This document shows positions 24,692 through 33,706 of a stretch of DNA of 64,000 nt, one piece after another (position 1 is the first letter of the stretch; the number at the start of each line of letters is the position of its first letter). This DNA comes from Pseudomonas aeruginosa PAO1 (GTDB taxonomy: Bacteria; Pseudomonadota; Gammaproteobacteria; Pseudomonadales; Pseudomonadaceae). The DNA lies in the NCBI RefSeq assembly GCF_000006765.1, contig NC_002516.2. One strand, written 5' to 3'. A program made the translations under genes and the position numbers. The notes below the pieces were generated by a model. That model searched no databases, was not told the origin of the DNA, and was given only the letters and a program-made list of their open reading frames with translations.

Positions 24692-25067
24692 CGGGCATGC
24701 AGGGACTCGGTCGCCGGCCACTCATCACGGGGTGGACGATCTGTGAAAACGGCGACAATCGCCAGAGATGCGACGTTTGACCATCCAGCCTCAGGCACCT
24801 GCTGTTTTTCGGACACAGGTTCAGGCCAGCTCACAGACACGCGACGCATACGCATGGTGGGAAGAAATGTTCGAGGGCGAGGACCTCCTGGCCAACCTGG
24901 GCCGGAGGTTGTCGTCGGAGCGCGAGAACGAAACATCCTTGCGAGCGATGTCGAGGAACCCGGCGACAACGGCGCCGGGTTATTAACTATCAGTGTCGGG
25001 CAAGAGGGCGAGATTCGAGCCGAAAGCTCAATCGCAAAGGATGTGAGTTCCACCTAGGTCATATTTA

Positions 25068-25095
25068 ATTTAACATAATATACATTATGCGAATC
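25068..25095 (-). other. dif: Chromosomal dif site (XerCD recombination site)
   Basis: Minus strand reads GATTCGCATAA-TGTATA-TTATGTTAAAT. XerD arm and spacer are identical to E. coli dif (GGTGCGCATAA TGTATA TTATGTTAAAT); XerC arm differs at 2 positions. Confidence 0.95.
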
Positions 25096-25100
25096 CATGG

Positions 25101-26400
25101 TGTTACGGCCAAATAGTAATGGCGTCTAGGGTTTCCCTCCTGCATCACAGGAGGCACGCCATGACTGCGGCAACTTGCGGATGGGTCACCATGAGCATGC
25201 GGGAGCTGGATCGCCTCAAGGTCATCGAGGCAATCATCGAGGGTCGGTTGAAACCTGCCGCTGCGGCGCAGCGTCTGCGCCTGACGACACGTCAGGTGCA
25301 CCGGCTGGTTCTGCGTTATCGCGAGGACGGCCCAGCCGGCCTAACATCTCGTCGACGTGGTCAGCCGAGTAACCGGCAGTTGTCGCCAGGTCTGGAGAAT
25401 CCCGCCATTAGCTTGATTCGACGGAACTATAGCGACTTTGGTCCAACTCTGGCCCAGGAAAAACTGGTCGAGTGCCACGGCCTTAAGCTGGCCAAAGAAA
25501 CGGTACGACGGATCATGGTTGATGCCGGCATGTGGGTACCGCGCAAGCAACGGCCGCCCAAGGTCTATCAGCCACGCAACCGGCGCGCCTGTTGCGGCGA
25601 ACTGATCCAGATCGATGATGGAAAGCCGCTGGCCTTCTACAGCGACAAAGCCAGCGTGTTCCGCAGTAACCACAAGGCGCCTCAGGGCGGCGACGGCTAT
25701 ACCCAGTTCGGCCGAGCGATGTACGAGTTGAACATCGAGAGCTGCGCCAACAGCAGCCAGGCCAAAGGTCGTGTGGAGCGTGCGAACCTCACTCTGCAGG
25801 ATCGCCTGGTCAAGGAGCTGCGGCTTCGCGGAATCAGCAACATGGCCGACGCCAATGCCTTTGCAGCCCACTTTATGGCCAGCTACAACGCGCGTTTTGC
25901 CAAGCCGCCGCGCTCTGAGCATGACTGCCATCGCCCGCTGCACAGTGATGAAGATTTGGAGCTGATCTTCGCCTGGCGAGAAGCGCGGCGGGTTTCGCAG
26001 CGGTTGACCGTGCAGTACGACAAGGTGCTGTATCTGCTAGCGGACACTCCGCAGTCCCGTCGCCTGGCGGGTGATCACGTCGATGATCTACCACTACCCG
26101 AATGGCCGCATCGAGCCCAGGGTGGACGGCACCGCCCTCCCCTTTACCACCTACGACAAACTCTGCGAGATAGACCAGGGTGCCATCGTCGAGAACAAGC
26201 GCTTGGGTCATGTGCTGCAAGTCGCCCAGCTCGTCCAAGCGCAGCGCGACAATCGGCGCTCGCAATCGGTACCGGGAAATCCGCGGCAGTCAACGCAAGG
26301 CAAGATGCTGTCGAAGAAGGCGCAGCGAGAACTGATGCCGGAAGATATCGCCGCTGCCCTGGATAACACGCCACCATCGAGGCGAAGTCGCCATGCGTGA
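25101..26400 (+). mobile_element. Degenerate IS1202-family (formerly ISNCY) insertion sequence abutting dif
   Basis: Starts TGTTACGGCCAAATAGTAATG 5 bp after the XerC arm and carries a transposase pseudogene. No right IR was found by eye. Confidence 0.75.
25161..26400 (+). pseudogene. IS1202/ISNCY DDE transposase pseudogene
   Basis: MSMRELDRLKVI, GELIQID, YSDK, ANSSQAKGRVER, QYDK motifs. IQIDD is joined directly to GKPLAFYSDK (internal deletion near 25618). A frameshift near 26075 continues as YHYPNGRIE...DQGAIVENKRL. Confidence 0.85.
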
Positions 26401-26631
26401 GTCAGCGCCGAGGCACTGAAGATACTAGTGGTTGCCGGAGCTGCGCGGGACTTACGTGCTATTCCTGCGCCTTCCGGCCACGGTTGGCAGCTCCAAGTGC
26501 GCTACAGTCCCGACGGTCAATATTACCCGCTACGTTCTCGACGTGAACTTGTGCGCATATTTGGATCACTGGACTCGCTTAATCGGTACGCAAATCGTTT
26601 GGGCATCCACACGTATAGCGTGGAGTTATAA
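26401..26631 (+). pseudogene. Small plasmid/transposon-type protein, probably 5'-truncated
   Basis: Frame VSAEALKILVVAGAARDLRAI...WQLQVRY...LRSRRELVRIFGSLDSL..YANRLGI..YSVEL resembles ~80-aa mobile-element proteins. No ATG at its apparent N-terminus. Confidence 0.4.
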
Positions 26632-26885
26632 CTGTGACACGAATTTCCCCATGTGGGGAGTCGACAGGTTTCTAGAAAAATAGTTCGATAAGTGTAGCGA
26701 CTTTCGTTTGCAAACCGCTACAAATAGCGCTGCGGGCCAACCAGCTGAGCTTTTCCAACACCTGACAGTGTGGAATAACGCTTCTCCGAGTTCCGGAATT
26801 AAGGGCGATGGTATCCACATATTATTTAGCGGGCGTGATAATTTTTTATCTGGCCCTCTTTATCGAAGGAGAGGGCCAGATAACA

Positions 26886-27542
26886 CTAGATCGCTGCAAA
26901 ATAGGCCAGCAGCAAGGTTACTGCGGTCGTATAGCGGAGACCCGATTTGATCGTATTGAATACGTCGCTGAAGTTGGGAGCGTCCAGACGTAAACCAACA
27001 CCAGGTCCGACTAACGCTTTGATATCCTCAGGGAGCGTCATTGCCTGCCAAGTACCAGGAGTCAGTGTCCTCAGATTCACACCGTAGGAAACCAGTAGTC
27101 CGGATTCCTGCGAAATGCCTCCGGATGCATCCGTAGAGAAACCAACGTCGGTTGGATAGACGTTCGGACTGCCCTTGAAGCGGTCAAGATATCCACTGCC
27201 GAAACGGGCTTTTATTCGATCAAGATTCTGCGCCATGGAGGTGAGCAAAGGAAGTATCTCAACGTTGCAAACACGTTCCTTTTCATTAACCATCCTGAAA
27301 CCAATGGTTACGCCGTTGGCTATTTCCTGGGCAAGCAACGTCGAGTATTGCTGGTCCGCTTTGCTGATGTCTCCGCCCGGAATGAATTCCGGGTGTAGCC
27401 TCAGCGGAATGTCCCATGCCTCTATAGTCTGTGCTTCGGGGAAGACAAAGCCAGGATTGCATTGACGGGCAAAACCCTTATAGATATTAGCCAGGGATTG
27501 ACCAGGATTCTGGTAGATATTGATCTCGGCCATCGTCGCCAC
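26886..27542 (-). CDS. Hypothetical protein with hydrophobic C-terminal tail (PA2222-like)
   Basis: 218-aa ORF starting 2 bp after the muramidase stop, with AGAGG SD. No recognisable motif. Confidence 0.75.
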   Translation of the reverse strand: MATMAEINIYQNPGQSLANIYKGFARQCNPGFVFPEAQTIEAWDIPLRLHPEFIPGGDISKADQQYSTLLAQEIANGVTIGFRMVNEKERVCNVEILPLLTSMAQNLDRIKARFGSGYLDRFKGSPNVYPTDVGFSTDASGGISQESGLLVSYGVNLRTLTPGTWQAMTLPEDIKALVGPGVGLRLDAPNFSDVFNTIKSGLRYTTAVTLLLAYFAAI

Positions 27543-27544
27543 CT

Positions 27545-28564
27545 CTAGAGTCCCAGGGATCGTTGGAGATAGTCCGCGCGATTGTTCAATCGCCTGGCTA
27601 TGCCATCGCTCGGATCGGTACTGTTGGGAGTACCATTCCAGTTCCTCAACTCCCTAATGGCGGCTAGCCAGTCGCTCTGGGAAATAGCAGTCTCAAAGTT
27701 TGGGAACGAGGAATACTCACCATAGTGGTAATACAGGTCTGTCACTATGGTTTTGACCGCCGGAGGTAAGGTGCTCCACTGCTGGAACTTCACCTTCATC
27801 CGATCAGTGACCTTGATCATCTTGGCGGTAAAGAGGGACAGCCCGTCTTCATCTGTGAGTACCGGGATGAGTTGGGCTAATGCCTGGAAGGTCGCGGTGT
27901 TCGCTCCTTTCAAGCCGAGGGCGGGGCGAATTTTTTTGCGCGTGGATTCAGCAATGTTCAGAGCCTGAATGCCGGATTCATCGTGCTGGCCGACATCGAA
28001 GCCATAGCCAATCGTTACACCTGATTCACCGTTGGGGTCAGAGGTCGGAATAGTAGCTCTGTTGCCTCGCCCACCAGGTGGAAGCTCATGACGGGCGGTG
28101 AAATCGATATTAATACCCATTTCAATCAGATAGGAAATATTGGACTGGAGGCGGCTGACCTTATCGGCTTTGTCACCATCGATGCGGTCTTGGATAAAGG
28201 TATTGATCTGCTGGTTCAATTGCACCTGGAGGTCGCTCACCGAAATACTGTTGGCTCCTCCGGTTTCGGCGACCGTACGAATAGTGACCTCATGAACCTT
28301 GAAGTAGTCGTCGAAGACTAGAACGGGCCGCCCGGCAGTCTGGCTTATGACCTGCGTCAGTTGCCCCGTCAACCCACCTTGTGCTGAGTAGCTGGGGGAT
28401 GACAGCCAGTCGGTATAGAGGTCAGGAATTCCGTGAGTAATTCGGATAGGCTCTGGTTCCGCTGCGAGCAGAACACGCTGTGCCTCCTCTCGTTCTGGAT
28501 TTTCTAGGTAATTGTATAGCCGCTCCAGATTGCGCTGAAGGGTCTGATCCAATTCTCTATTCAC
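27545..28564 (-). CDS. Pesticin C-terminal (T4-lysozyme-like muramidase) domain protein (PA2223-like)
   Basis: IDFTARHE...IP...SGVTIGYGFDVGQ and LP...T...LYYHYG...FPNF.....W...IRELRNW...RR..RADYL match the pesticin muramidase pattern. No signal peptide. Confidence 0.8.
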   Translation of the reverse strand: MNRELDQTLQRNLERLYNYLENPEREEAQRVLLAAEPEPIRITHGIPDLYTDWLSSPSYSAQGGLTGQLTQVISQTAGRPVLVFDDYFKVHEVTIRTVAETGGANSISVSDLQVQLNQQINTFIQDRIDGDKADKVSRLQSNISYLIEMGINIDFTARHELPPGGRGNRATIPTSDPNGESGVTIGYGFDVGQHDESGIQALNIAESTRKKIRPALGLKGANTATFQALAQLIPVLTDEDGLSLFTAKMIKVTDRMKVKFQQWSTLPPAVKTIVTDLYYHYGEYSSFPNFETAISQSDWLAAIRELRNWNGTPNSTDPSDGIARRLNNRADYLQRSLGL

Positions 28565-28596
28565 CTTAGTCTCCTCTGCTTAGTGAAGCCAATTTG

Positions 28597-29340
28597 TTAT
28601 TTCATTGACTGTTCGCACTCGCTTTCTAGACGATTGAACTCAGTAGAATACTTATCATATTCATTTTGCATTTTTTCCGGCAAATACTCTCGCTTCAGGT
28701 CTCTGAAGAAGCTGCCCTTCTCTAGTATCTTCTTGCATTGGTGATTTTTGGCAGACAAGGAGAGATGTGCCGTATGAAAAACACGAGAGAGATAACCAAA
28801 ACCTTCAAACATATCCCTACACTCTGTTATCAGTTTTCGAGAAATCCAGTAGGCCTTCTCTGTCTCGTTATTCTTCAGTGCTTTCTTCACTTGCTTGTCG
28901 TTGAATCTTATAGAGGCGGGCTCGCAGATTGGGGAAGGCTTCCAATACGTACCAGTAAAACCTGCTGCCGCCCCGCAGAAGCCCTGACAGTCCCTGCTTG
29001 CGGCTCCTTTCTCTATGGTAATTCTGTCATCATTCAGTTTGAAAACGACATCGCACGACATATCGCCGATGCCACGGACGTCGACCTGCACATGACCTGA
29101 CTCTATAGTTCCATTCAATCCGCAAGCATGTGCATTGTGTCCAGTGCTTCGTATCCGAAACTTTTGAAGTCCTTCGAATAACGGAGATATCGTCAGCAGC
29201 CCACTATTTCCAGTCCTATAGTAATCCCCAGGAGGGAAGTAGCTCTTTGGTTCTTCAGCGACACAAAGAGTGATATTGTAGTAAAGGGTGAGTATGGCAA
29301 AAATGCTAATGCTTTTGAGCTTCATGTTTATGCCCTGCAT
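28597..29340 (-). CDS. Secreted Cys-containing protein, candidate muramidase inhibitor/immunity (PA2224-like)
   Basis: Sec signal (MKLKSISIFAILTLYYNITLCVA; likely start 29325); HACGLNG...SCDVVF...DCQGFCGAAAGFTGTY pattern. Confidence 0.65.
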   Translation of the reverse strand: MQGINMKLKSISIFAILTLYYNITLCVAEEPKSYFPPGDYYRTGNSGLLTISPLFEGLQKFRIRSTGHNAHACGLNGTIESGHVQVDVRGIGDMSCDVVFKLNDDRITIEKGAASRDCQGFCGAAAGFTGTYWKPSPICEPASIRFNDKQVKKALKNNETEKAYWISRKLITECRDMFEGFGYLSRVFHTAHLSLSAKNHQCKKILEKGSFFRDLKREYLPEKMQNEYDKYSTEFNRLESECEQSMK

Positions 29341-29572
29341 GAAAGCAGCTAGGTGGGGCGCTGGGTGATCCCATATAGGATGGTTTTTTGCTGGTCAGAT
29401 CGACTGATCTATAAGTTCCGTCGAGCAGGCTAGTCCGCCCAAAAAACACAAGCAGACTTGTAAGAGTCATTCTGTTTTACCAGCACTTCATGTTCAACAT
29501 CACTAAAGTTTAGACGTCATTGAGCATGAGCTGGAAAAAGTTGCGGCAACGACCCTAGACGCTGAACGCTGC

Positions 29573-29989
29573 TCACCTGAGGCGTTCCACTTCCTTGCGA
29601 AACATCACTCTCTGCTTGAAGCTGAAACCTCCGCCACCATCCAGCAGCGCCGGCGGAGCAACCGGTAGATCGGGCTCGCGGCAGGTGGCTATCACGCGCT
29701 TGGCGAAGACTTCATCGAGCGTACTGCGGCTCTTATCATTCCCCGCGCCGTACTGTACCCGGCAACTGCTTATGCGCCCCGACGAGCTTGCGAAGCGGAA
29801 AAACACCATAACATCGGCCTCGGGGATCTCATCTCCCGGTGCGAACAGCGGGTAACGAAGCCTCTTGGCGAATTCCTGGCGGAATTCCTGGATAAAAATG
29901 GCCTCTTGCTCTGCTCGCTCCTGCAAAGTGACTGAATGGGAGCAGCCGCCGATCAGACTCAGCAATACCAATAGGCAAACTATCCTCAA
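29573..29989 (-). CDS. Lipoprotein with TonB C-terminal-like domain (PA2225-like)
   Basis: TTG start and lipobox IGGC; RLRYP...V.V.F....SGRISSCRV...LDE......PP pattern. Confidence 0.6.
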   Translation of the reverse strand: MRIVCLLVLLSLIGGCSHSVTLQERAEQEAIFIQEFRQEFAKRLRYPLFAPGDEIPEADVMVFFRFASSSGRISSCRVQYGAGNDKSRSTLDEVFAKRVIATCREPDLPVAPPALLDGGGGFSFKQRVMFRKEVERLR

Positions 29990-30032
29990 CGCTCTTCCTC
30001 CTTGAAAAAGAGGCAGTCTTTTATTTTAGTAT

Positions 30033-30533
30033 CTAAAAATGACTCTTGACGTCTAAGCCAAGAACTGCAAGAGCTTCCAGCGCCAGGTTTTGACCTTCTG
30101 CAATACCCGAATTATGTGCAAACTCGACAAGTCGCTCGATTACTCTGACGCCACCCTGATCTGGCTCGACAAATTCCGATATATTATCCATAGCAACAGA
30201 TGCGTCCCACGCAGCCTGACTAAGCAGCTCTTTATACAATGCATCAGCGCTAGATATATTACGAATATTTGCGAGATTAAGCCTGATTCGATCCAAGGCT
30301 TCGTGCGCGATCTGAAGTAGCAAATATGGAAATGGATTCTTTTGAGTTCGACGCTTCCTGCATGAGTCGCTAATTAGTCCAGCAAGCATTGCTGATCCTT
30401 CGGCCTCAATGCGAAGGGAATCATCAGCAATCGAGATTGTCCGCGCCTTCGCAATATAGCCCAAAACGTAAGCATCGAACTGAGTCTCGGCAATCATAGA
30501 CAGAATCTGATTATTACGATTATTGAAATTCAT
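30033..30533 (-). CDS. qsrO: Quorum-sensing repressor QsrO
   Basis: ATG at 30533 with AAGGAG SD gives 166 aa. Lies directly downstream of vqsM as in PAO1; symbol assigned by synteny. Confidence 0.75.
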   Translation of the reverse strand: MNFNNRNNQILSMIAETQFDAYVLGYIAKARTISIADDSLRIEAEGSAMLAGLISDSCRKRRTQKNPFPYLLLQIAHEALDRIRLNLANIRNISSADALYKELLSQAAWDASVAMDNISEFVEPDQGGVRVIERLVEFAHNSGIAEGQNLALEALAVLGLDVKSHF

Positions 30534-30567
30534 AAGATGCTCCTTGCCCAATCTCAAACTAGATAGA

Positions 30568-31545
30568 TCAGTGGAAACTGTTTCTGAATTCTGTAGTAGA
30601 CTGCCCGGTCCAACGTCTGAATGCATGTCTAAAACTCGCTGTTTCCGAGTACCCCAGAATATCGCTAATACGATCAACTGGTATCGATGAATTCAGTAGC
30701 AGTGCAATTGCTCGTTCTTTGCGGGCCTTATCTACAATCTGGCGATAAGTGCAGCCCTCGTCCGCCAAGCGACGTCTTACCGTCCGCTCATTCATGCGTA
30801 AATACTTTGCGGTAGTCACCAAGCTAGGGTATTGATCTGGTATGGAATCAAGGAATAACTCGATTCGCTGACGGAGCCCTCCCATCTCTACTTCCAACAG
30901 AGCATTGAAACTCTCACCTGCCATAGTCAGGGCCGACTGAAATACCGCCGGATTGGCAGTCGCCAGTGTTCTATTCAACTGATGAGCTGGAAAGCTAAAT
31001 ATTATGTCATTTCCTTCATGCTTCACAGGCAAAGAAAAGAAACCTTCATATATTGTTTTATCTGCGCCGTGCACAGGCACTGTCAATGCAGAGATGGGAA
31101 AGTCATTACCTAACAGATCCATAATGAGCTTGTAGGTTGCAGAGGCTATAACATTTACATGAAACTGACGGGATGCGTCATTCCACTCTGGCTTAAAGTT
31201 AACTGAAATATGGATTTCTACTTCGTAATTCTCCCTAGGCTTGACGCCAACATTAGCTATATCACGATTGAACAACTTGACATAGGCCCTGATGACTTTC
31301 AAAATATCACCTACGTTCTCGGCGCATAGCAACGCCAATCCTATCACGCCATAATCAGATATATGGTAATAAGTTCCAAGATTCAGTCCTTCTTTTCCTG
31401 AATACCCCTTGCTGACTATCCAGTTGTAAAGTGCGTCACTTCTTGACTCTTGTTCTGCCGCAAAGGGTGGTATTGCGATATCACGATCACGAAGATAGTT
31501 CTGCAGAGGGCGCCATTCAAAATCAAATATGTGTTCGGTCACCAT
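30568..31545 (-). CDS. vqsM: AraC-family regulator VqsM
   Basis: N-terminal ligand domain plus C-terminal double HTH (MNERTVRRRLADEG, ILGYSETASFRHAFRRWTGQS). 325 aa; alternative GTG start at 31557. Confidence 0.88.
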   Translation of the reverse strand: MVTEHIFDFEWRPLQNYLRDRDIAIPPFAAEQESRSDALYNWIVSKGYSGKEGLNLGTYYHISDYGVIGLALLCAENVGDILKVIRAYVKLFNRDIANVGVKPRENYEVEIHISVNFKPEWNDASRQFHVNVIASATYKLIMDLLGNDFPISALTVPVHGADKTIYEGFFSLPVKHEGNDIIFSFPAHQLNRTLATANPAVFQSALTMAGESFNALLEVEMGGLRQRIELFLDSIPDQYPSLVTTAKYLRMNERTVRRRLADEGCTYRQIVDKARKERAIALLLNSSIPVDRISDILGYSETASFRHAFRRWTGQSTTEFRNSFH

Positions 31546-31553
31546 GTCTATAT

Positions 31554-32765
31554 TCACCTCACCCCTACTGTTCTTGATATAGCCCTGAACGCTGCAAGTG
31601 CCTCATGCTCCATACGGATGCCGTCAACGTTGTAGTCGACATACGCGGAGGTCTTTGCAATCACCACACGCCTAAGTGGATTTACATAAATAAACTGCCC
31701 GTACACTCCGATAGCCAAGAACTCCCCTTCTTTGCCTTCTGGAATCCACCACTGGTAACCATACCCAAGATTTGGCTCACCATCCTCTATGTAACGTCCA
31801 GGACGCAAGTGAGCACTCCGAGGTTTGGTTGATGCCTTGACCCACTCAGCACTTACAATTTGACTTCCAGTCAGGCTGCGACCGCCATGAAGAAATAATA
31901 GACCAATGCGTGCAAAGTCTCTTAGGCAAAGGTTCACCCCACCGAATGCTAGCTCTGTGCCCCGATCGTCTGTTAACCAAGCACCTTCACATTCGGCACC
32001 CAGTTGGGGCCAAAGTCTTTGATTCATAAACTGTGAGGGGCCCATACCAGTCGCGCCCAATAAGACCATACCAAGCACCTGGGTATCTACGCTAACGTAG
32101 TGGTGCACTCTCCCCGGGGCATCTTCTCTTCTCAATGAACTCACTTTTTCATTTACTGATCCGCCAAGCGCTATAGTCCTACCTAGCTGGTTGATATCGG
32201 AGTCCGAATTCCCGTAGTCCTCACTGAAAGCTATTCCTGATGACATCTCAAGCACATCTCTCAAAGAAACACCCGCATATCCGCCAGCAGAAAGCTGTGG
32301 GGCGTACAGGTTCACAGGATCTAGCAGACTGTGTATTGATCCTTCATCAACTGCCATTCCAATCAAGAGGGACATTAGTGATTTGCTTAGCGACCAGCCA
32401 ATAGCAAGGCTTTTCGCACTATTGCCCAGGTAGTATTCCTCAAAGGCAATGCGATCGTCACTGAGAACTATAAGGCCGGTGGTATTGCTGCTCGCCAACC
32501 AGTCTTTAAAGCCAATCTCGTGACCTTGAAAGCTAAATGAGCCAGGCATATCCCTGAGGTTTTTTTCAAAAAAATGAGCCGCTCCGCTCTTCTTTATTGG
32601 GACCGAGTTAAACAGTCTCGGCATTGCTCGAAAATTTTCAGCAATTTTCCCCGAGTCAAACAAAGTGTAAAAATTCCACACTCTCACACCTGCACTACCA
32701 ATGCAGGCGATGCTAAAAAAGATGAGAATCATTGAGAGGAAAATAGCATTTCTCTTATTTATCAT
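31554..32765 (-). CDS. Serine hydrolase, beta-lactamase class C-like/NylB family, exported (PA2228-like)
   Basis: SxxK (WSLSKS), YxS (HYVS), YGYQWW and GVYGQ motifs; N-terminal hydrophobic helix. Confidence 0.88.
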   Translation of the reverse strand: MINKRNAIFLSMILIFFSIACIGSAGVRVWNFYTLFDSGKIAENFRAMPRLFNSVPIKKSGAAHFFEKNLRDMPGSFSFQGHEIGFKDWLASSNTTGLIVLSDDRIAFEEYYLGNSAKSLAIGWSLSKSLMSLLIGMAVDEGSIHSLLDPVNLYAPQLSAGGYAGVSLRDVLEMSSGIAFSEDYGNSDSDINQLGRTIALGGSVNEKVSSLRREDAPGRVHHYVSVDTQVLGMVLLGATGMGPSQFMNQRLWPQLGAECEGAWLTDDRGTELAFGGVNLCLRDFARIGLLFLHGGRSLTGSQIVSAEWVKASTKPRSAHLRPGRYIEDGEPNLGYGYQWWIPEGKEGEFLAIGVYGQFIYVNPLRRVVIAKTSAYVDYNVDGIRMEHEALAAFRAISRTVGVR

Positions 32766-33706
32766 TCTTGTCGATCTCTCAGTTTGTGCTAGCTCGTCTC
32801 GACCCAGCTAACAGCCAGTGACTATCCGGTAGTGGAGCAAGGTTAAGTCCTTAAGGACTTTTCTCTTAAAGGTGAAGATCAAGGCATTTCACCATCTACT
32901 GATATTTAATTTTAACTCGCTTAACACTACTCCGCACGCATGCCATGCACTACTATTATCTGAGTCGCGAAGGTATCCGCCTCCCTTGGACTATGCTTTC
33001 AATTTAGCAACACGAAACACTGCAGCATGATCGATATCGCCCTTGGATGAATCGGCAGACTCATCAATAGGCGCCCGCAATAAACAAGACCCAACATCAC
33101 CGCATATCCCGGAGGATCAGCAACAGGATAGATTCAGTCTTTTTCATTATTTCCATCCGCCGCCTCATGCGTACTACTAGCCCGAAAGCTGATAAAACCA
33201 GCATGAAGCATCTTTTTGCTAGAGTATCTTCGGACAAATGCCGGATATTTTCGGACACCCTCTTCGGCAGGTCCTTAGCGGCACCATGTCTTATCTGCGC
33301 TTTTATTTCATTAAACACCCCATAGAGAGTACTAATGACTTGTCGTCCAGATTGTAACTATCGTAGATGAGTCGACTAGAGGTATTCGCTACAATTTATA
33401 GATTCGAAAATTCATTTCATGCTTGGAGATATCGATTTAACACTTATCTTGTGTTACTTCTGCGCTAGGTTCCGTACGCAAAGTAATGTCGTAAGCACCG
33501 TAGCGTGCAAGCCAGCGTGACCATTACGCCAAGATTCTTGACGAGCTTCAGAATCCCACGGCCAGCTCAGCTAGGTCCTGGGGACTCCCCGCCCACCGAG
33601 GTTATCGACGCATCCGGAGGGTCTGGCGGCTTGACAGCGGGCGAAGGCTTGGCGGACTCTATATTGTATTTAGTCGATACCATCTCGCATCTTAGAGAAC
33701 CCTCCC

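What the first reader, a model, noticed from the sequence alone, without database searches (positions are those of the whole stretch)
25096..26400. IS1202-family element inserted exactly 5 bp from the XerC arm of chromosomal dif
Seen: the dif XerC arm ends at 25095, then CATGG, then TGTTACGGCCAAATAG at 25101, an SD/ATG at 25161 and an ISNCY-type transposase. Established: the ISAba32 subgroup of the IS1202 family targets xrs/dif sites about 5 bp from the XerC arm, with TGT ends and short target duplications. Inference: this 'conserved hypothetical' ORF is the relic of a dif-targeted transposon that may have seeded the neighbouring island. It is now dead: deletion in the DDE core, a frameshift and no visible right IR.
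Basis: partly seen in the sequence, partly recalled or inferred. Interest (0 to 1): 0.8.

Follow-up and report, generated by a model that had tools for sequence, protein, structure and literature searches.

The report
Dead dif-hunting transposon beside PAO1 dif
The 'hypothetical' gene next to the Pseudomonas aeruginosa chromosome-dimer resolution site (dif) is the decayed left part of an IS1202-family transposon that homes to dif, and the quorum-sensing-modulating vqsM/qsrO island beside it lies exactly where intact relatives carry cargo genes.

Summary
The window carries the published PAO1 dif 28-mer at 25068-25095, with its XerC arm ending at 25095. CATGG follows, then a TGT-initiated left inverted repeat at 25101 and a broken ISNCY/IS1202-type transposase gene.

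Intact relatives start at exactly this base. They sit 3-7 bp from dif-like sites (34 of 55 loci) and make 5-6 bp target duplications. That places the relic in the dif-hunting ISAba32/ISAjo2 subgroup (59% aa identity to ISKpn21 transposase).

The copy is dead, with five lesions in tnp, the left end and orf80. No right end exists anywhere in the 64 kb window.

New findings:
- The relic belongs to a Pseudomonas-only clade built as tnp, a coupled 80-aa gene (orf80), cargo, then the right end. Complete copies carry 0-6.8 kb of cargo, including ars and cop operons.
- In P. aeruginosa, the relic plus the low-GC vqsM/qsrO island (25096-33554) form one polymorphic block. Other strains have a 2.75 kb segment instead.
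- The block's right border is a truncated IS5-like fragment, which is a deletion scar.

The idea that the transposon delivered the island is therefore plausible (about 0.45) but unproven. This is a new member of a known kind, of moderate interest.

The parts
25068..25095 (-). Chromosomal dif. On the + strand it reads XerD arm ATTTAACATAA, central TATACA, XerC arm TTATGCGAATC. The XerC arm faces the element.
   Evidence: It is an exact, unique match. It is identical to the published PAO1 dif at 2,443,082 (PMC2731167). Cumulative GC skew has its local maximum here.
25096..25100 (.). The 5-bp spacer CATGG between the XerC arm and the IS end. This is the expected position of one copy of the target duplication.
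   Evidence: Among P. aeruginosa alleles the spacer is CATGG, CAGGA or CAGAA.
25101..25120 (+). Left terminal inverted repeat (TGTTACGGCCAAATAGTAAT...). It is truncated: a 34-bp deletion after 25120 removed the rest of the IR and the second binding repeat GCCAAATAGAAATGTC.
   Evidence: Alignment with L003, L009 and L091. nhmmer left-end profile, E=3e-5. The same 23 nt begin complete elements on the P. oryzihabitans plasmid.
25161..26400 (+). Transposase pseudogene, PA2221 by position. Frame 1 runs 25161-26083 and frame 2 runs 26085-26400. Lesions: a 153-bp in-frame deletion at 25617|25618 (51 aa between catalytic D1 and D2), a 3-bp deletion at 25742|25743, and a 1-bp insertion at 26084.
   Evidence: NCBIfam NF033594, 369.6 bits. 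HTH_29, HTH_32, HTH_23 and HTH_28 domains. Protein alignment A1. DNA alignment with the full-length allele L001.
26393..26631 (+). Remnant of orf80, an 80-aa gene whose ATG overlaps the tnp stop (ATGCGTGA). A 4-bp deletion at 26401|26402 breaks it, and only the 67-aa tail ORF 26428-26631 remains in frame.
   Evidence: Intact in L001, L009, L090, L095-97 and both plasmid copies. dN/dS is 0.05-0.21 between elements. The family has 18 proteins and is found only in Pseudomonas.
26632..26653 (+). The last 22 bp of the conserved element core. Homology to the closest intact element (L096/L097) stops here, which is the cargo junction.
26654..33460 (.). Low-GC (0.48) island carrying PA2222-PA2228. It encodes DUF3218, a pesticin-lysozyme-domain protein, PA2224, PA2225, qsrO (PA2226), vqsM (PA2227, AraC-type) and PA2228 (beta-lactamase fold). 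It occupies the cargo position of the element.
   Evidence: GC values. Pfam hits. Gene names were assigned by exact matches of published PAO1 primers (PMC3923755). The island is always linked to the relic in the 15 relic-bearing sequences compared (window plus 14 loci) and is absent together with it in B-type strains.
33461..33554 (-). Truncated terminal fragment of an IS5-family (ISPst8-like) element. It forms the right border of the polymorphic block and is a deletion scar.
   Evidence: 83% identity to the 3' end of annotated ISPst8-family transposase genes on P. aeruginosa plasmids. Homology to B-type strains resumes at 33555.

Best explanation
Window 25101 to about 26653 is the decayed left portion of a transporter insertion sequence. 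It belongs to the IS1202 family, in the dif-hunting ISAba32/ISAjo2 subgroup.

How it works (inferred from the family): the TnsB-like DDE transposase binds the TGT-initiated terminal repeat and a second subterminal repeat at each end. It recognises a XerC/XerD-type recombination site, probably through XerC bound to its arm, and inserts the left end 5-6 bp outside the XerC arm in a fixed orientation. This duplicates 5-6 bp of target.

What is shown here: the insertion took place at the true chromosomal dif of a P. aeruginosa lineage. The element belonged to a Pseudomonas-specific clade built as IRL, tnp, orf80, cargo, two right-end repeats, IRR.

What happened afterwards: the copy decayed neutrally. 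The PAO1 type has five lesions, and other strains have different ones. The right end was lost, most likely through a deletion that began inside a later IS5-like insertion and also removed the neighbouring chromosomal segment.

The element is now immobile. The dif core is untouched.

Sub-claim, held at about 0.45: the vqsM/qsrO island (PA2222-PA2228), which lies in the cargo position, was brought in by this element.
For: dif identity and geometry.

Family assignment:
- NF033594 scores above its cut-off.
- Identity is 59%, 52% and 44% to ISKpn21, ISRel26 and Acinetobacter transposases. A 65%-identical protein is named ISBcen27.
- Q lies at E+7, the family signature, in the window's ...GRVERANLTLQ.
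- D148/D209/E254 spacing matches TnpAjo2 D142/D203/E247.

Targeting in relatives:
- 34 of 55 genome loci have the motif CATAA-N6-TTAT-N7 placed 3-7 bp before TGT.
- 15 loci have complete 5-6 bp duplications and lengths of 1566-1710 bp (two are about 2.3 kb).

Complete members of the same clade, all with their left end at the base equivalent to 25101:
- L090: 1902 bp, TSD GCGCG.
- L009: 2734 bp, TSD TACGCA, at a dif identical to the P. aeruginosa site in 25 of 28 positions (all differences in the outer XerC arm).
- L095/L097: 2554 bp.
- L096: an intact copy at P. aeruginosa-type dif plus CATGG.
- P. oryzihabitans plasmid: a pdif followed by elements of 4890 bp (ars cargo) and 8595 bp (cop cargo).

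Decay:
- Lesions are mapped.
- Different alleles carry different lesions.
- dN/dS is 0.48 within P. aeruginosa against 0.07-0.09 between intact elements.

Loss of the right end: searches find none, and searches identify the IS5-like scar.

Block polymorphism: breakpoints fall at 25095|25096 and 33554|33555.
Against: - No right inverted repeat, right-end repeats or target duplication survive in the window or in any P. aeruginosa locus examined. Transposition in situ, and the extent of the original element, therefore cannot be proven from this copy.
- Relic-free strains read TACAG after the XerC arm, not CATGG, CAGGA or CAGAA. Homology breaks at the end of the arm rather than 5 bp further on. 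A simple insertion into a present-day B-type site does not fit.
- The qsrO-vqsM-PA2228 trio also occurs at 77% identity on a P. aeruginosa plasmid in an integrase context, without any IS1202-family element.
- The only full-length P. aeruginosa allele (L001) has a 12-bp in-frame deletion in the first HTH.
Confidence: 0.88

Rival explanations
1. The relic is real, but the vqsM/qsrO island is unrelated to it. The low-GC DNA arrived separately, for example with the IS5-like element, an integrase-borne element or homologous recombination. It replaced the element's original right part.
For: - No IRR or TSD encloses the island.
- A related qsrO-vqsM-PA2228 trio travels on a plasmid next to an integrase and IS21, without an IS1202-family element.
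- The distal part of the island differs between alleles. L001 has a resolvase gene after the equivalent of window position 30003.
- None of the 120 metagenome contigs with the right-end motif carries island genes.
Against: - The low-GC DNA starts within about 22 bp of the orf80 stop. This is the same junction at which five independent relatives start their cargo.
- Cargo sizes of 0-6.8 kb in relatives include the 6.8 kb seen here.
- The relic and island are gained or lost together in every P. aeruginosa locus compared.
Confidence: 0.45
2. The element did not transpose into the chromosomal dif. It sat next to a pdif or attP on a plasmid or IMEX, and was brought in by XerCD recombination or by homologous recombination across the conserved dif.
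For: - The A/B polymorphism breaks exactly at the end of the XerC arm.
- The spacer and the last arm bases vary (GAATC/GAAGC) in the way IMEX-derived arms do.
- IMEXs and a Pf-like prophage are integrated at this very dif in other strains.
- The clade occurs next to pdif on Pseudomonas plasmids.
Against: - There is no second dif-like site anywhere in the window. The best other match has 10 of 28 mismatches and is in the wrong orientation.
- An intact relative sits at the same dif with the same CATGG spacer (L096), so direct targeting of this site does occur.
- Direct targeting of chromosomal dif is documented for the subgroup.
Confidence: 0.1
3. The ORF is a domesticated DNA-binding protein, retained because its HTH domains bind near dif or regulate the adjacent operon. 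On this view it is not a decaying pseudogene.
For: - The N-terminal HTH domains are intact.
- The identical 401-aa product is seen on at least 1000 contigs.
- RefSeq names it 'helix-turn-helix domain-containing protein'.
Against: - Several lineages carry different, independent lesions. These include a 75-bp deletion within the N-terminal DNA-binding region (L091) and a 5' truncation by another transposon (L092).
- Many strains lack the gene altogether.
- dN/dS within the species is relaxed at 0.48, against 0.08 between active copies.
- Its own binding repeat in the left end is deleted in the window.
Confidence: 0.05

Closest known systems
ISKpn21 (transporter IS, IS1202 family, ISAba32/ISAjo2 subgroup; Klebsiella plasmids and chromosomes)
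   Same: - The transposase is 59% identical over 97% of its length.
- It has TGT...ACA ends and a 5-bp TSD.
- Its left end lies 5 bp from the XerC side of dif or dif-like sites, including chromosomal dif, and tandem insertions occur.
- It carries a passenger ORF.
   Different: - The window copy is a dead fragment without a right end.
- The Pseudomonas clade has a conserved, translationally coupled 80-aa gene. This gene is not found in the 55-69%-identical relatives or in the metagenome contigs sharing the right-end motif.
- The clade can carry multi-gene cargo (ars and cop operons) rather than one ORF.
ISBcen27 (Burkholderia cenocepacia; same subgroup)
   Same: - It is reported at chromosomal dif sites of Burkholderia replicons, with a 5-bp TSD.
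- A Pseudomonas protein 65% identical to the window ORF is named ISBcen27 by NCBI.
- The nearest genome relatives are mostly Burkholderiales, at 55-69% identity.
   Different: It has a single ORF and no orf80. Harmer et al. judged the sites it targets to be only loosely dif-like, whereas here the target is a perfect dif.
ISAba32 / ISAjo2 / ISAba71 (Acinetobacter 'dif site hunters')
   Same: They share the same geometry (IRL 5 bp from the XerC arm), the same orientation, TGT/ACA ends, a second internal transposase-binding site near each end, and a TnsB-like transposase with two HTH domains, a DDE domain and Q at E+7.
   Different: - Identity is only about 44% aa.
- They are 1.5 kb long with no passenger genes.
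- They mostly sit on plasmid pdif modules.
IMEXs (integrative elements exploiting Xer: CTX-type and Pf-type filamentous prophages, gonococcal genetic island)
   Same: They also put foreign DNA directly beside dif. Such elements are seen at this same dif in other P. aeruginosa strains.
   Different: IMEXs integrate by XerCD recombination inside dif and are flanked by two Xer sites. The relic lies outside an intact dif, has a DDE transposase, and no second Xer site is present.

Membership tests
IS1202 family (Harmer, Pong & Hall 2023; Siguier et al. 2022) | Large TnsB-like DDE transposase of about 440-480 aa with two N-terminal HTH domains | tested here: met
   HTH_29, HTH_32, HTH_23 and HTH_28 lie at residues 13-119. 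NF033594 ISNCY_2 scores 369.6 bits against a cut-off of 250. Full-length alleles and relatives are 455-479 aa. In the window the gene is broken.
IS1202 family (Harmer, Pong & Hall 2023; Siguier et al. 2022) | Conserved D, D, E motifs with Q (not K/R) seven residues after the catalytic E | tested here: met
   The window encodes ...QID......YSDK... and ...GRVERANLTLQ.... D148/D209/E254 of P0075 are invariant in alignment A4 and have the same spacing as TnpAjo2 D142/D203/E247. The 51 aa between D1 and D2 are deleted in the window.
IS1202 family (Harmer, Pong & Hall 2023; Siguier et al. 2022) | Imperfect terminal inverted repeats of about 24-26 bp starting 5'-TGT and ending ACA-3' | tested here: inconclusive
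   The left end TGTTACGGCC... is present at 25101. The right end is absent from the window. In complete clade members both ends are present, TGT...TTGACA.
IS1202 family (Harmer, Pong & Hall 2023; Siguier et al. 2022) | [quoted passage not shown] | tested here: inconclusive
   It is deleted in the window (34-bp deletion after 25120). It is present as GCCAAATAGAAATGTC in other P. aeruginosa alleles (L003, L091) and in L009, L090 and L093-95. Two GACATTTCTA repeats lie at their right ends.
ISAba32 / ISAjo2 subgroup (dif or xrs targeting) | Left end located 5-6 bp from the XerC arm of a dif or dif-like site, in a fixed orientation | tested here: met
   The XerC arm ends at 25095 and the IRL starts at 25101, with tnp reading away from dif. 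The same geometry is found in 34 of 55 relatives and in L009, L090, L093, L095, L096 and L100.
ISAba32 / ISAjo2 subgroup (dif or xrs targeting) | Target site duplication of 5-6 bp (3-5 bp in Harmer et al.) | tested here: inconclusive
   This cannot be tested on the window copy because it has no right end. It is met in relatives: 15 loci with 5-6 bp TSDs, L090 GCGCG, L009 TACGCA, and CAAAG on the plasmid pair.
ISAba32 / ISAjo2 subgroup (dif or xrs targeting) | Transposase clusters with subgroup members rather than with the IS1202 (27-28 bp DR) or ISTde1 (15-17 bp DR) subgroups | tested here: inconclusive
   Identity is 59% to ISKpn21, 52% to ISRel26 and 65% to an ISBcen27-named protein, all of which are subgroup members.
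IMEX (Xer-integrated element) | Flanked by two Xer sites (dif plus a hybrid or degenerate site), with integration inside the dif core | tested here: not met
   There is only one dif-like site in 64 kb. The next best match has 10 of 28 mismatches and is in inverted orientation. The dif core is intact and the element lies outside it.

The most novel reading that the evidence does not exclude
A Pseudomonas-specific clade of dif-hunting IS1202-family elements, recognisable by a coupled 80-aa accessory gene, acts as a cargo transposon. On this reading it delivers multi-gene modules to chromosomal dif and plasmid pdif sites, including metal resistance operons, immunity or defence-like genes, and in P. 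aeruginosa PAO1 the quorum-sensing-repressing qsrO/vqsM operon. The terminus-proximal PA2221-PA2228 accessory region of PAO1 would then be the fossil of one such delivery. orf80 would be a clade-specific factor for targeting or regulation.
Probability: 0.4. Interest if true: 0.65.

Novelty: new member of a known kind. Interest (0 to 1): 0.5.

Why it matters
- It gives a concrete identity to a widely conserved P. aeruginosa gene (PA2221 by position). RefSeq labels it 'hypothetical' or 'HTH domain-containing protein', and the identical product is seen on at least 1000 contigs.
- It extends dif-hunting IS1202-family elements to Pseudomonas. Neither founding paper mentions this genus in its main text.
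- It offers a mechanistic origin for an accessory region next to the replication terminus that modulates quorum sensing and type III secretion when over-expressed (PMC3923755). That paper only states that the operon 'is located on a transposable element'.
- It shows that the P. aeruginosa dif flank is a hotspot used by three kinds of mobile DNA. These are a DDE transposon that reads the Xer site, Xer-integrated IMEXs and filamentous prophages, and secondary IS or Tn insertions. This helps in interpreting the large insertions and deletions reported at PA2221 in clinical isolates.
- The intact clade members, with a defined target and multi-kb cargo capacity, could be useful as site-specific insertion tools.

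Tried and rejected
1. A weak right-IR candidate at 26634-26666 (...GAGTCGACA) lies at the same distance after orf80 as a look-alike in L009. I rejected it because the true L009 IRR lies 1 kb further on with a perfect 6-bp TSD. The window segment is also not recovered by the right-end profile.

2. An IRL-like motif occurs at 33452-33492, near the island's right border. It was the second-best left-end profile hit but only E=4.2. It turned out to lie inside an IS5-like (ISPst8) fragment.

3. I looked for a second dif-like site that would make the block an IMEX and found none.

4. The first genome scan, using the single protein P0075, found nothing because its peptide patterns were too specific. 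The scan with the alignment worked.

5. orf80 function remains unknown. There was no Pfam hit for the intact protein and no NCBIfam hit for the window remnant. The AF2 model has pLDDT 72, and there was no PDB fold match with E<0.001 and TM>0.55.

6. A metagenome scan with the right-end motif returned 120 contigs. All came from more distant family members (40-55% aa), and none had orf80 or island genes.

7. A plasmid search with the island DNA found only a partial, IS1202-independent copy of qsrO-vqsM-PA2228.

A look-up with PA2228 returned only contig-end fragments.

9. pD36-4 (CP012956), the reference for ISAba32, is not in the plasmid collection.
Full report
**1. The observation**

The 28-mer ATTTAACATAATATACATTATGCGAATC occurs once in the window, at 25068-25095, with none expected by chance. 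Its reverse complement is the dif sequence published for P. aeruginosa PAO1 at 2,443,082 (PMC2731167).

A PAO1-sized genome record (CP047067.1, 2,442,717 onward) is co-linear with the window. Thirteen published PAO1 primers for PA2222-PA2230 match the window exactly (PMC3923755). Cumulative GC skew turns over here.

On the + strand the XerD arm is on the left and the XerC arm (TTATGCGAATC) ends at 25095. Then come CATGG (25096-25100), TGTTACGGCCAAATAG (25101-), an AGGAGG and the ATG at 25161.

**2. What the ORF is**

ORF 25161-26366 has four N-terminal HTH-type Pfam domains. It scores 369.6 bits (cut-off 250) on NCBIfam NF033594 'ISNCY family transposase', in two stretches with part of the profile missing.

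A database search returned thousands of relatives:
- The identical 401-aa product is on at least 1000 contigs, named 'hypothetical' or 'helix-turn-helix domain-containing protein' in P. aeruginosa.
- A rare full-length 460-aa allele exists (P0075).
- Intact proteins of 455-479 aa at 55-89% identity are named ISNCY transposases, one of them ISBcen27.

P0075 is 59% identical over 97% of its length to annotated ISKpn21 transposases. It is 52% identical to ISRel26 and about 44% to Acinetobacter ISNCY transposases. These are the members of the short-TSD, dif-targeting subgroup of the IS1202 family (PMC10132070; bioRxiv 10.1101/2022.12.17.520857).

The family signature, Q seven residues after the catalytic E, is present (GRVERANLTLQ). 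The invariant D148/D209/E254 of the clade have the spacing of TnpAjo2 D142/D203/E247.

**3. Do intact homologues begin at 25101 and sit next to dif?**

Yes. I examined 55 relatives from species-representative genomes that had enough left flank.
- 34 have the strict motif N6-[CT]ATAA-N6-TTAT-N7 lying 3-7 bp before a TGT end. Several of the others are tandem insertions or slightly degenerate sites.
- 15 have a complete element bounded by the same 5-6 bp on both sides, with lengths of 1566-1710 bp and two of about 2.3 kb.

Closer relatives (70-89% aa) give exact boundaries:

| Locus | Length | Target site | TSD |
|---|---|---|---|
| L090 | 1902 bp | dif-like site | GCGCG |
| L009 | 2734 bp | dif matching the P. 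aeruginosa site in 25 of 28 positions | TACGCA |
| L095 / L097 | 2554 bp | degenerate dif-like site (L095) | CAGTC at the left; the contig ends 2 bp (CA) past the IRR |
| L096 | intact | P. aeruginosa-type dif | same CATGG spacer as the window |
| P. oryzihabitans plasmid NZ_CP044073 | 4890 + 8595 bp | pdif GATTTAACATAA-GATAGA-TTATGCGAAGT | CAAAG (flanks the pair) |

On the plasmid, the first 23 nt of both elements are identical to the relic's left end as preserved in other P. aeruginosa alleles (20 of them survive in the window). In every case the left end corresponds to window position 25101.

**4. Anatomy of the clade, and what is left in the window**

Complete Pseudomonas members share one layout:
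- an IRL plus a second binding repeat (GCCAAATAGAAATGTC);
- tnp;
- an 80-aa gene whose ATG overlaps the tnp stop (orf80);
- a variable cargo region that starts within about 22 bp of the orf80 stop;
- two GACATTTCTA repeats;
- an IRR ending TTGACA.

orf80 is confined to Pseudomonas, with 18 proteins found. It is under purifying selection, with dN/dS of 0.05-0.21. It has no recognisable family or fold.

Cargo in complete copies:

| Copy | Cargo |
|---|---|
| L090 | none |
| L097 | one small ORF |
| L009 | an SMI1_KNR4 gene set |
| L095 / L098 | a T5orf172 gene |
| plasmid IS#1 | arsRBCH |
| plasmid IS#2 | ptrA-copABCD-copRS |

Relative to the full-length P. aeruginosa allele (L001) and other alleles, the window copy has these lesions:
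- A 34-bp deletion after 25120, which removes the inner binding repeat.
- A 153-bp in-frame deletion at 25617|25618, flanked by ATGG microhomology. It removes the 51 aa between the first and second catalytic Asp, so the RNase-H fold is destroyed although D, D and E remain encoded.
- A 3-bp deletion at 25742|25743.
- A 1-bp insertion at 26084, which causes the frameshift.
- A 4-bp deletion at 26401|26402, which breaks orf80.

No right-end repeat or IRR exists anywhere in the 64 kb, nor in any P. aeruginosa locus fetched.

**5. Population context**

The relic is not fixed in the species. Relic-bearing strains (A type) show an allelic series with different, independent lesions:

| Allele | Spacer | State |
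|---|---|---|
| PAO1 type (window, L113-116) | CATGG | the lesions listed above |
| L003-L008 | CAGAA | 129-bp deletion that removes the catalytic E |
| L091 | CATGG | 75-bp plus 1-bp deletions |
| L092 | not applicable | 5' end replaced by a TniABQ transposon |
| L001 / L002 | CAGGA | full-length ORF with a 12-bp deletion in HTH1 |

Within-species dN/dS is 0.48, based on 15 substitutions. Between intact elements it is 0.07-0.09. This pattern is neutral decay, not domestication.

Other P. aeruginosa genomes with the same LysR neighbour (B type: L102, L103, L105, L109-111) lack both the relic and the island. After the XerC arm they read TACAGGTTCACAGG... and carry a 2.75-kb segment of native GC (0.64). 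That segment encodes a Lactamase_B-fold protein, a Gly-zipper protein and an SDR.

Homology to the window breaks exactly at 25095|25096 and resumes at 33555. So window 25096-33554 behaves as one unit: the spacer, the relic and 6.8 kb of GC-0.48 DNA carrying PA2222-PA2228.

The last 90 bp of that unit (33461-33554) are the truncated end of an ISPst8-like IS5-family element. The right border is therefore a deletion scar. This is a simple explanation for the missing IRR and for the replacement of the B segment.

**6. Was the island cargo?**

In favour:
- The low-GC DNA begins at the cargo junction used by five independent relatives.
- Its size is within the observed cargo range.
- The relic and island are always gained or lost together.

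Against:
- There is no IRR or TSD.
- The spacer differs from the B-type flank.
- A related qsrO-vqsM-PA2228 trio travels in a different, integrase-associated context on a plasmid.
- Metagenome contigs with the right-end motif gave no island genes.

I rate the cargo reading at about 0.45. One weak hint is that the least decayed allele has the spacer CAGGA. This matches the B-type flank (TA-CAGGT-TCACAGG) at four of five positions if a 2-bp indel is allowed. This is inference only.

**7. Comparison with what is known, and novelty**

dif-hunting by this subgroup is established, including at chromosomal dif and in tandem arrays. This is therefore a new member of a known kind.

What I did not find reported:
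- Pseudomonas is not mentioned in the main text of either founding paper. It is also absent from the one held supplement of Harmer et al..
- No paper in the library links IS1202 or ISNCY elements with P. aeruginosa dif.
- I found no description of the tnp-orf80-cargo architecture with multi-gene cargo. This part rests on loci outside the window.

I could not query ISfinder. The clade may already have an IS name there.

**8. Verdict**

Interest is moderate (0.5). The result is a clean, well-supported annotation with a plausible but unproven link to a quorum-sensing-modulating accessory operon.

Noticed in passing
L107:6300-9631 (P. aeruginosa CP124670.1; equivalent to window 25068-25095): Two tandem copies of a 1652-bp element are integrated at dif in a relic-free strain. 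Each encodes 114-aa, RHH-type 120-aa and 78-aa ORFs. They are bounded by dif and two hybrid sites (CAACATAAGGC-CGAGCA-TTATGCGAAGC / ...GAATC). This is a small IMEX-like satellite.
   Followed up: partly
L004:1-4901 and L001:2582-4902: In L004 a Pf-like filamentous prophage (Phage_CRI, G5P, Coat_B) lies directly left of the relic. In L001 a 2.3-kb gene set lies there instead. Both end in a hybrid site ACGTAACGCC-G(A/T)GGTC-ATTATGCGAA(T/G)C, and L001 keeps a second complete dif 2.3 kb upstream. These are Xer-integrated elements next to the dead transposon.
   Followed up: partly
L092:1-4000: A TniA/TniB/TniQ (Tn5053/Tn402-like) transposon has replaced dif, the left end and the first codons of the relic's transposase gene in one P. 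aeruginosa lineage.
   Followed up: no
window 33461-33554: A truncated end of an IS5-family, ISPst8-like element (83% identity to plasmid copies) forms the right border of the PA2221-PA2228 block. The PA2229 upstream primer of Koehler et al. lies inside it.
   Followed up: yes
window 25091-25100 and equivalents in L001-L008, L091, L096, L102-L111: The last bases of the XerC arm (GAATC or GAAGC) and the next 5 bp (CATGG, CAGGA, CAGAA or TACAG) vary far more than the surrounding DNA, which is 96-99% identical. The GAAGC form matches arms contributed by IMEXs. This is unexplained.
   Followed up: partly
L094 (NZ_CP044073.1 149231-162720, P. oryzihabitans plasmid): Two clade members lie head-to-tail after a single pdif. 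One is 4890 bp carrying arsRBCH and the other is 8595 bp carrying ptrA-copABCD-copRS. CAAAG flanks the pair as a whole. The inner junction reads ...GCCTTGAAA-CGGCG-TGTTAC, so the first element's right end does not finish in ACA.
   Followed up: partly
window 27545-28564 (-), PA2223 by position: This 339-aa protein has a C-terminal Pfam 'Pesticin' (phage-lysozyme-like bacteriocin) domain (E 3e-16). It sits next to a DUF3218 protein and small ORFs, and may be a bacteriocin or effector-immunity module inside the vqsM/qsrO island.
   Followed up: no
L095:5305-6537: An intact clade member sits beside a degenerate dif-like site in an accessory region that also encodes a HigB-like toxin with an HTH partner, an AcrF3-family anti-CRISPR homologue and an MvaT-like protein.
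   Followed up: no
window 24749-25067 versus L104, L106, L108: In some P. aeruginosa genomes, homology to the window already stops at 24748. That is 57 bp after the LysR gene and before dif, and unrelated genes follow (PqiA/MlaD, or YobI-ATPase and a group II intron RT). These are further rearrangements at the terminus. The literature reports a 57-kb deletion PA2164-PA2221 with a prophage (PMC12607904) and a 52.7-kb insertion downstream of PA2221 (PMC8088628).
   Followed up: no
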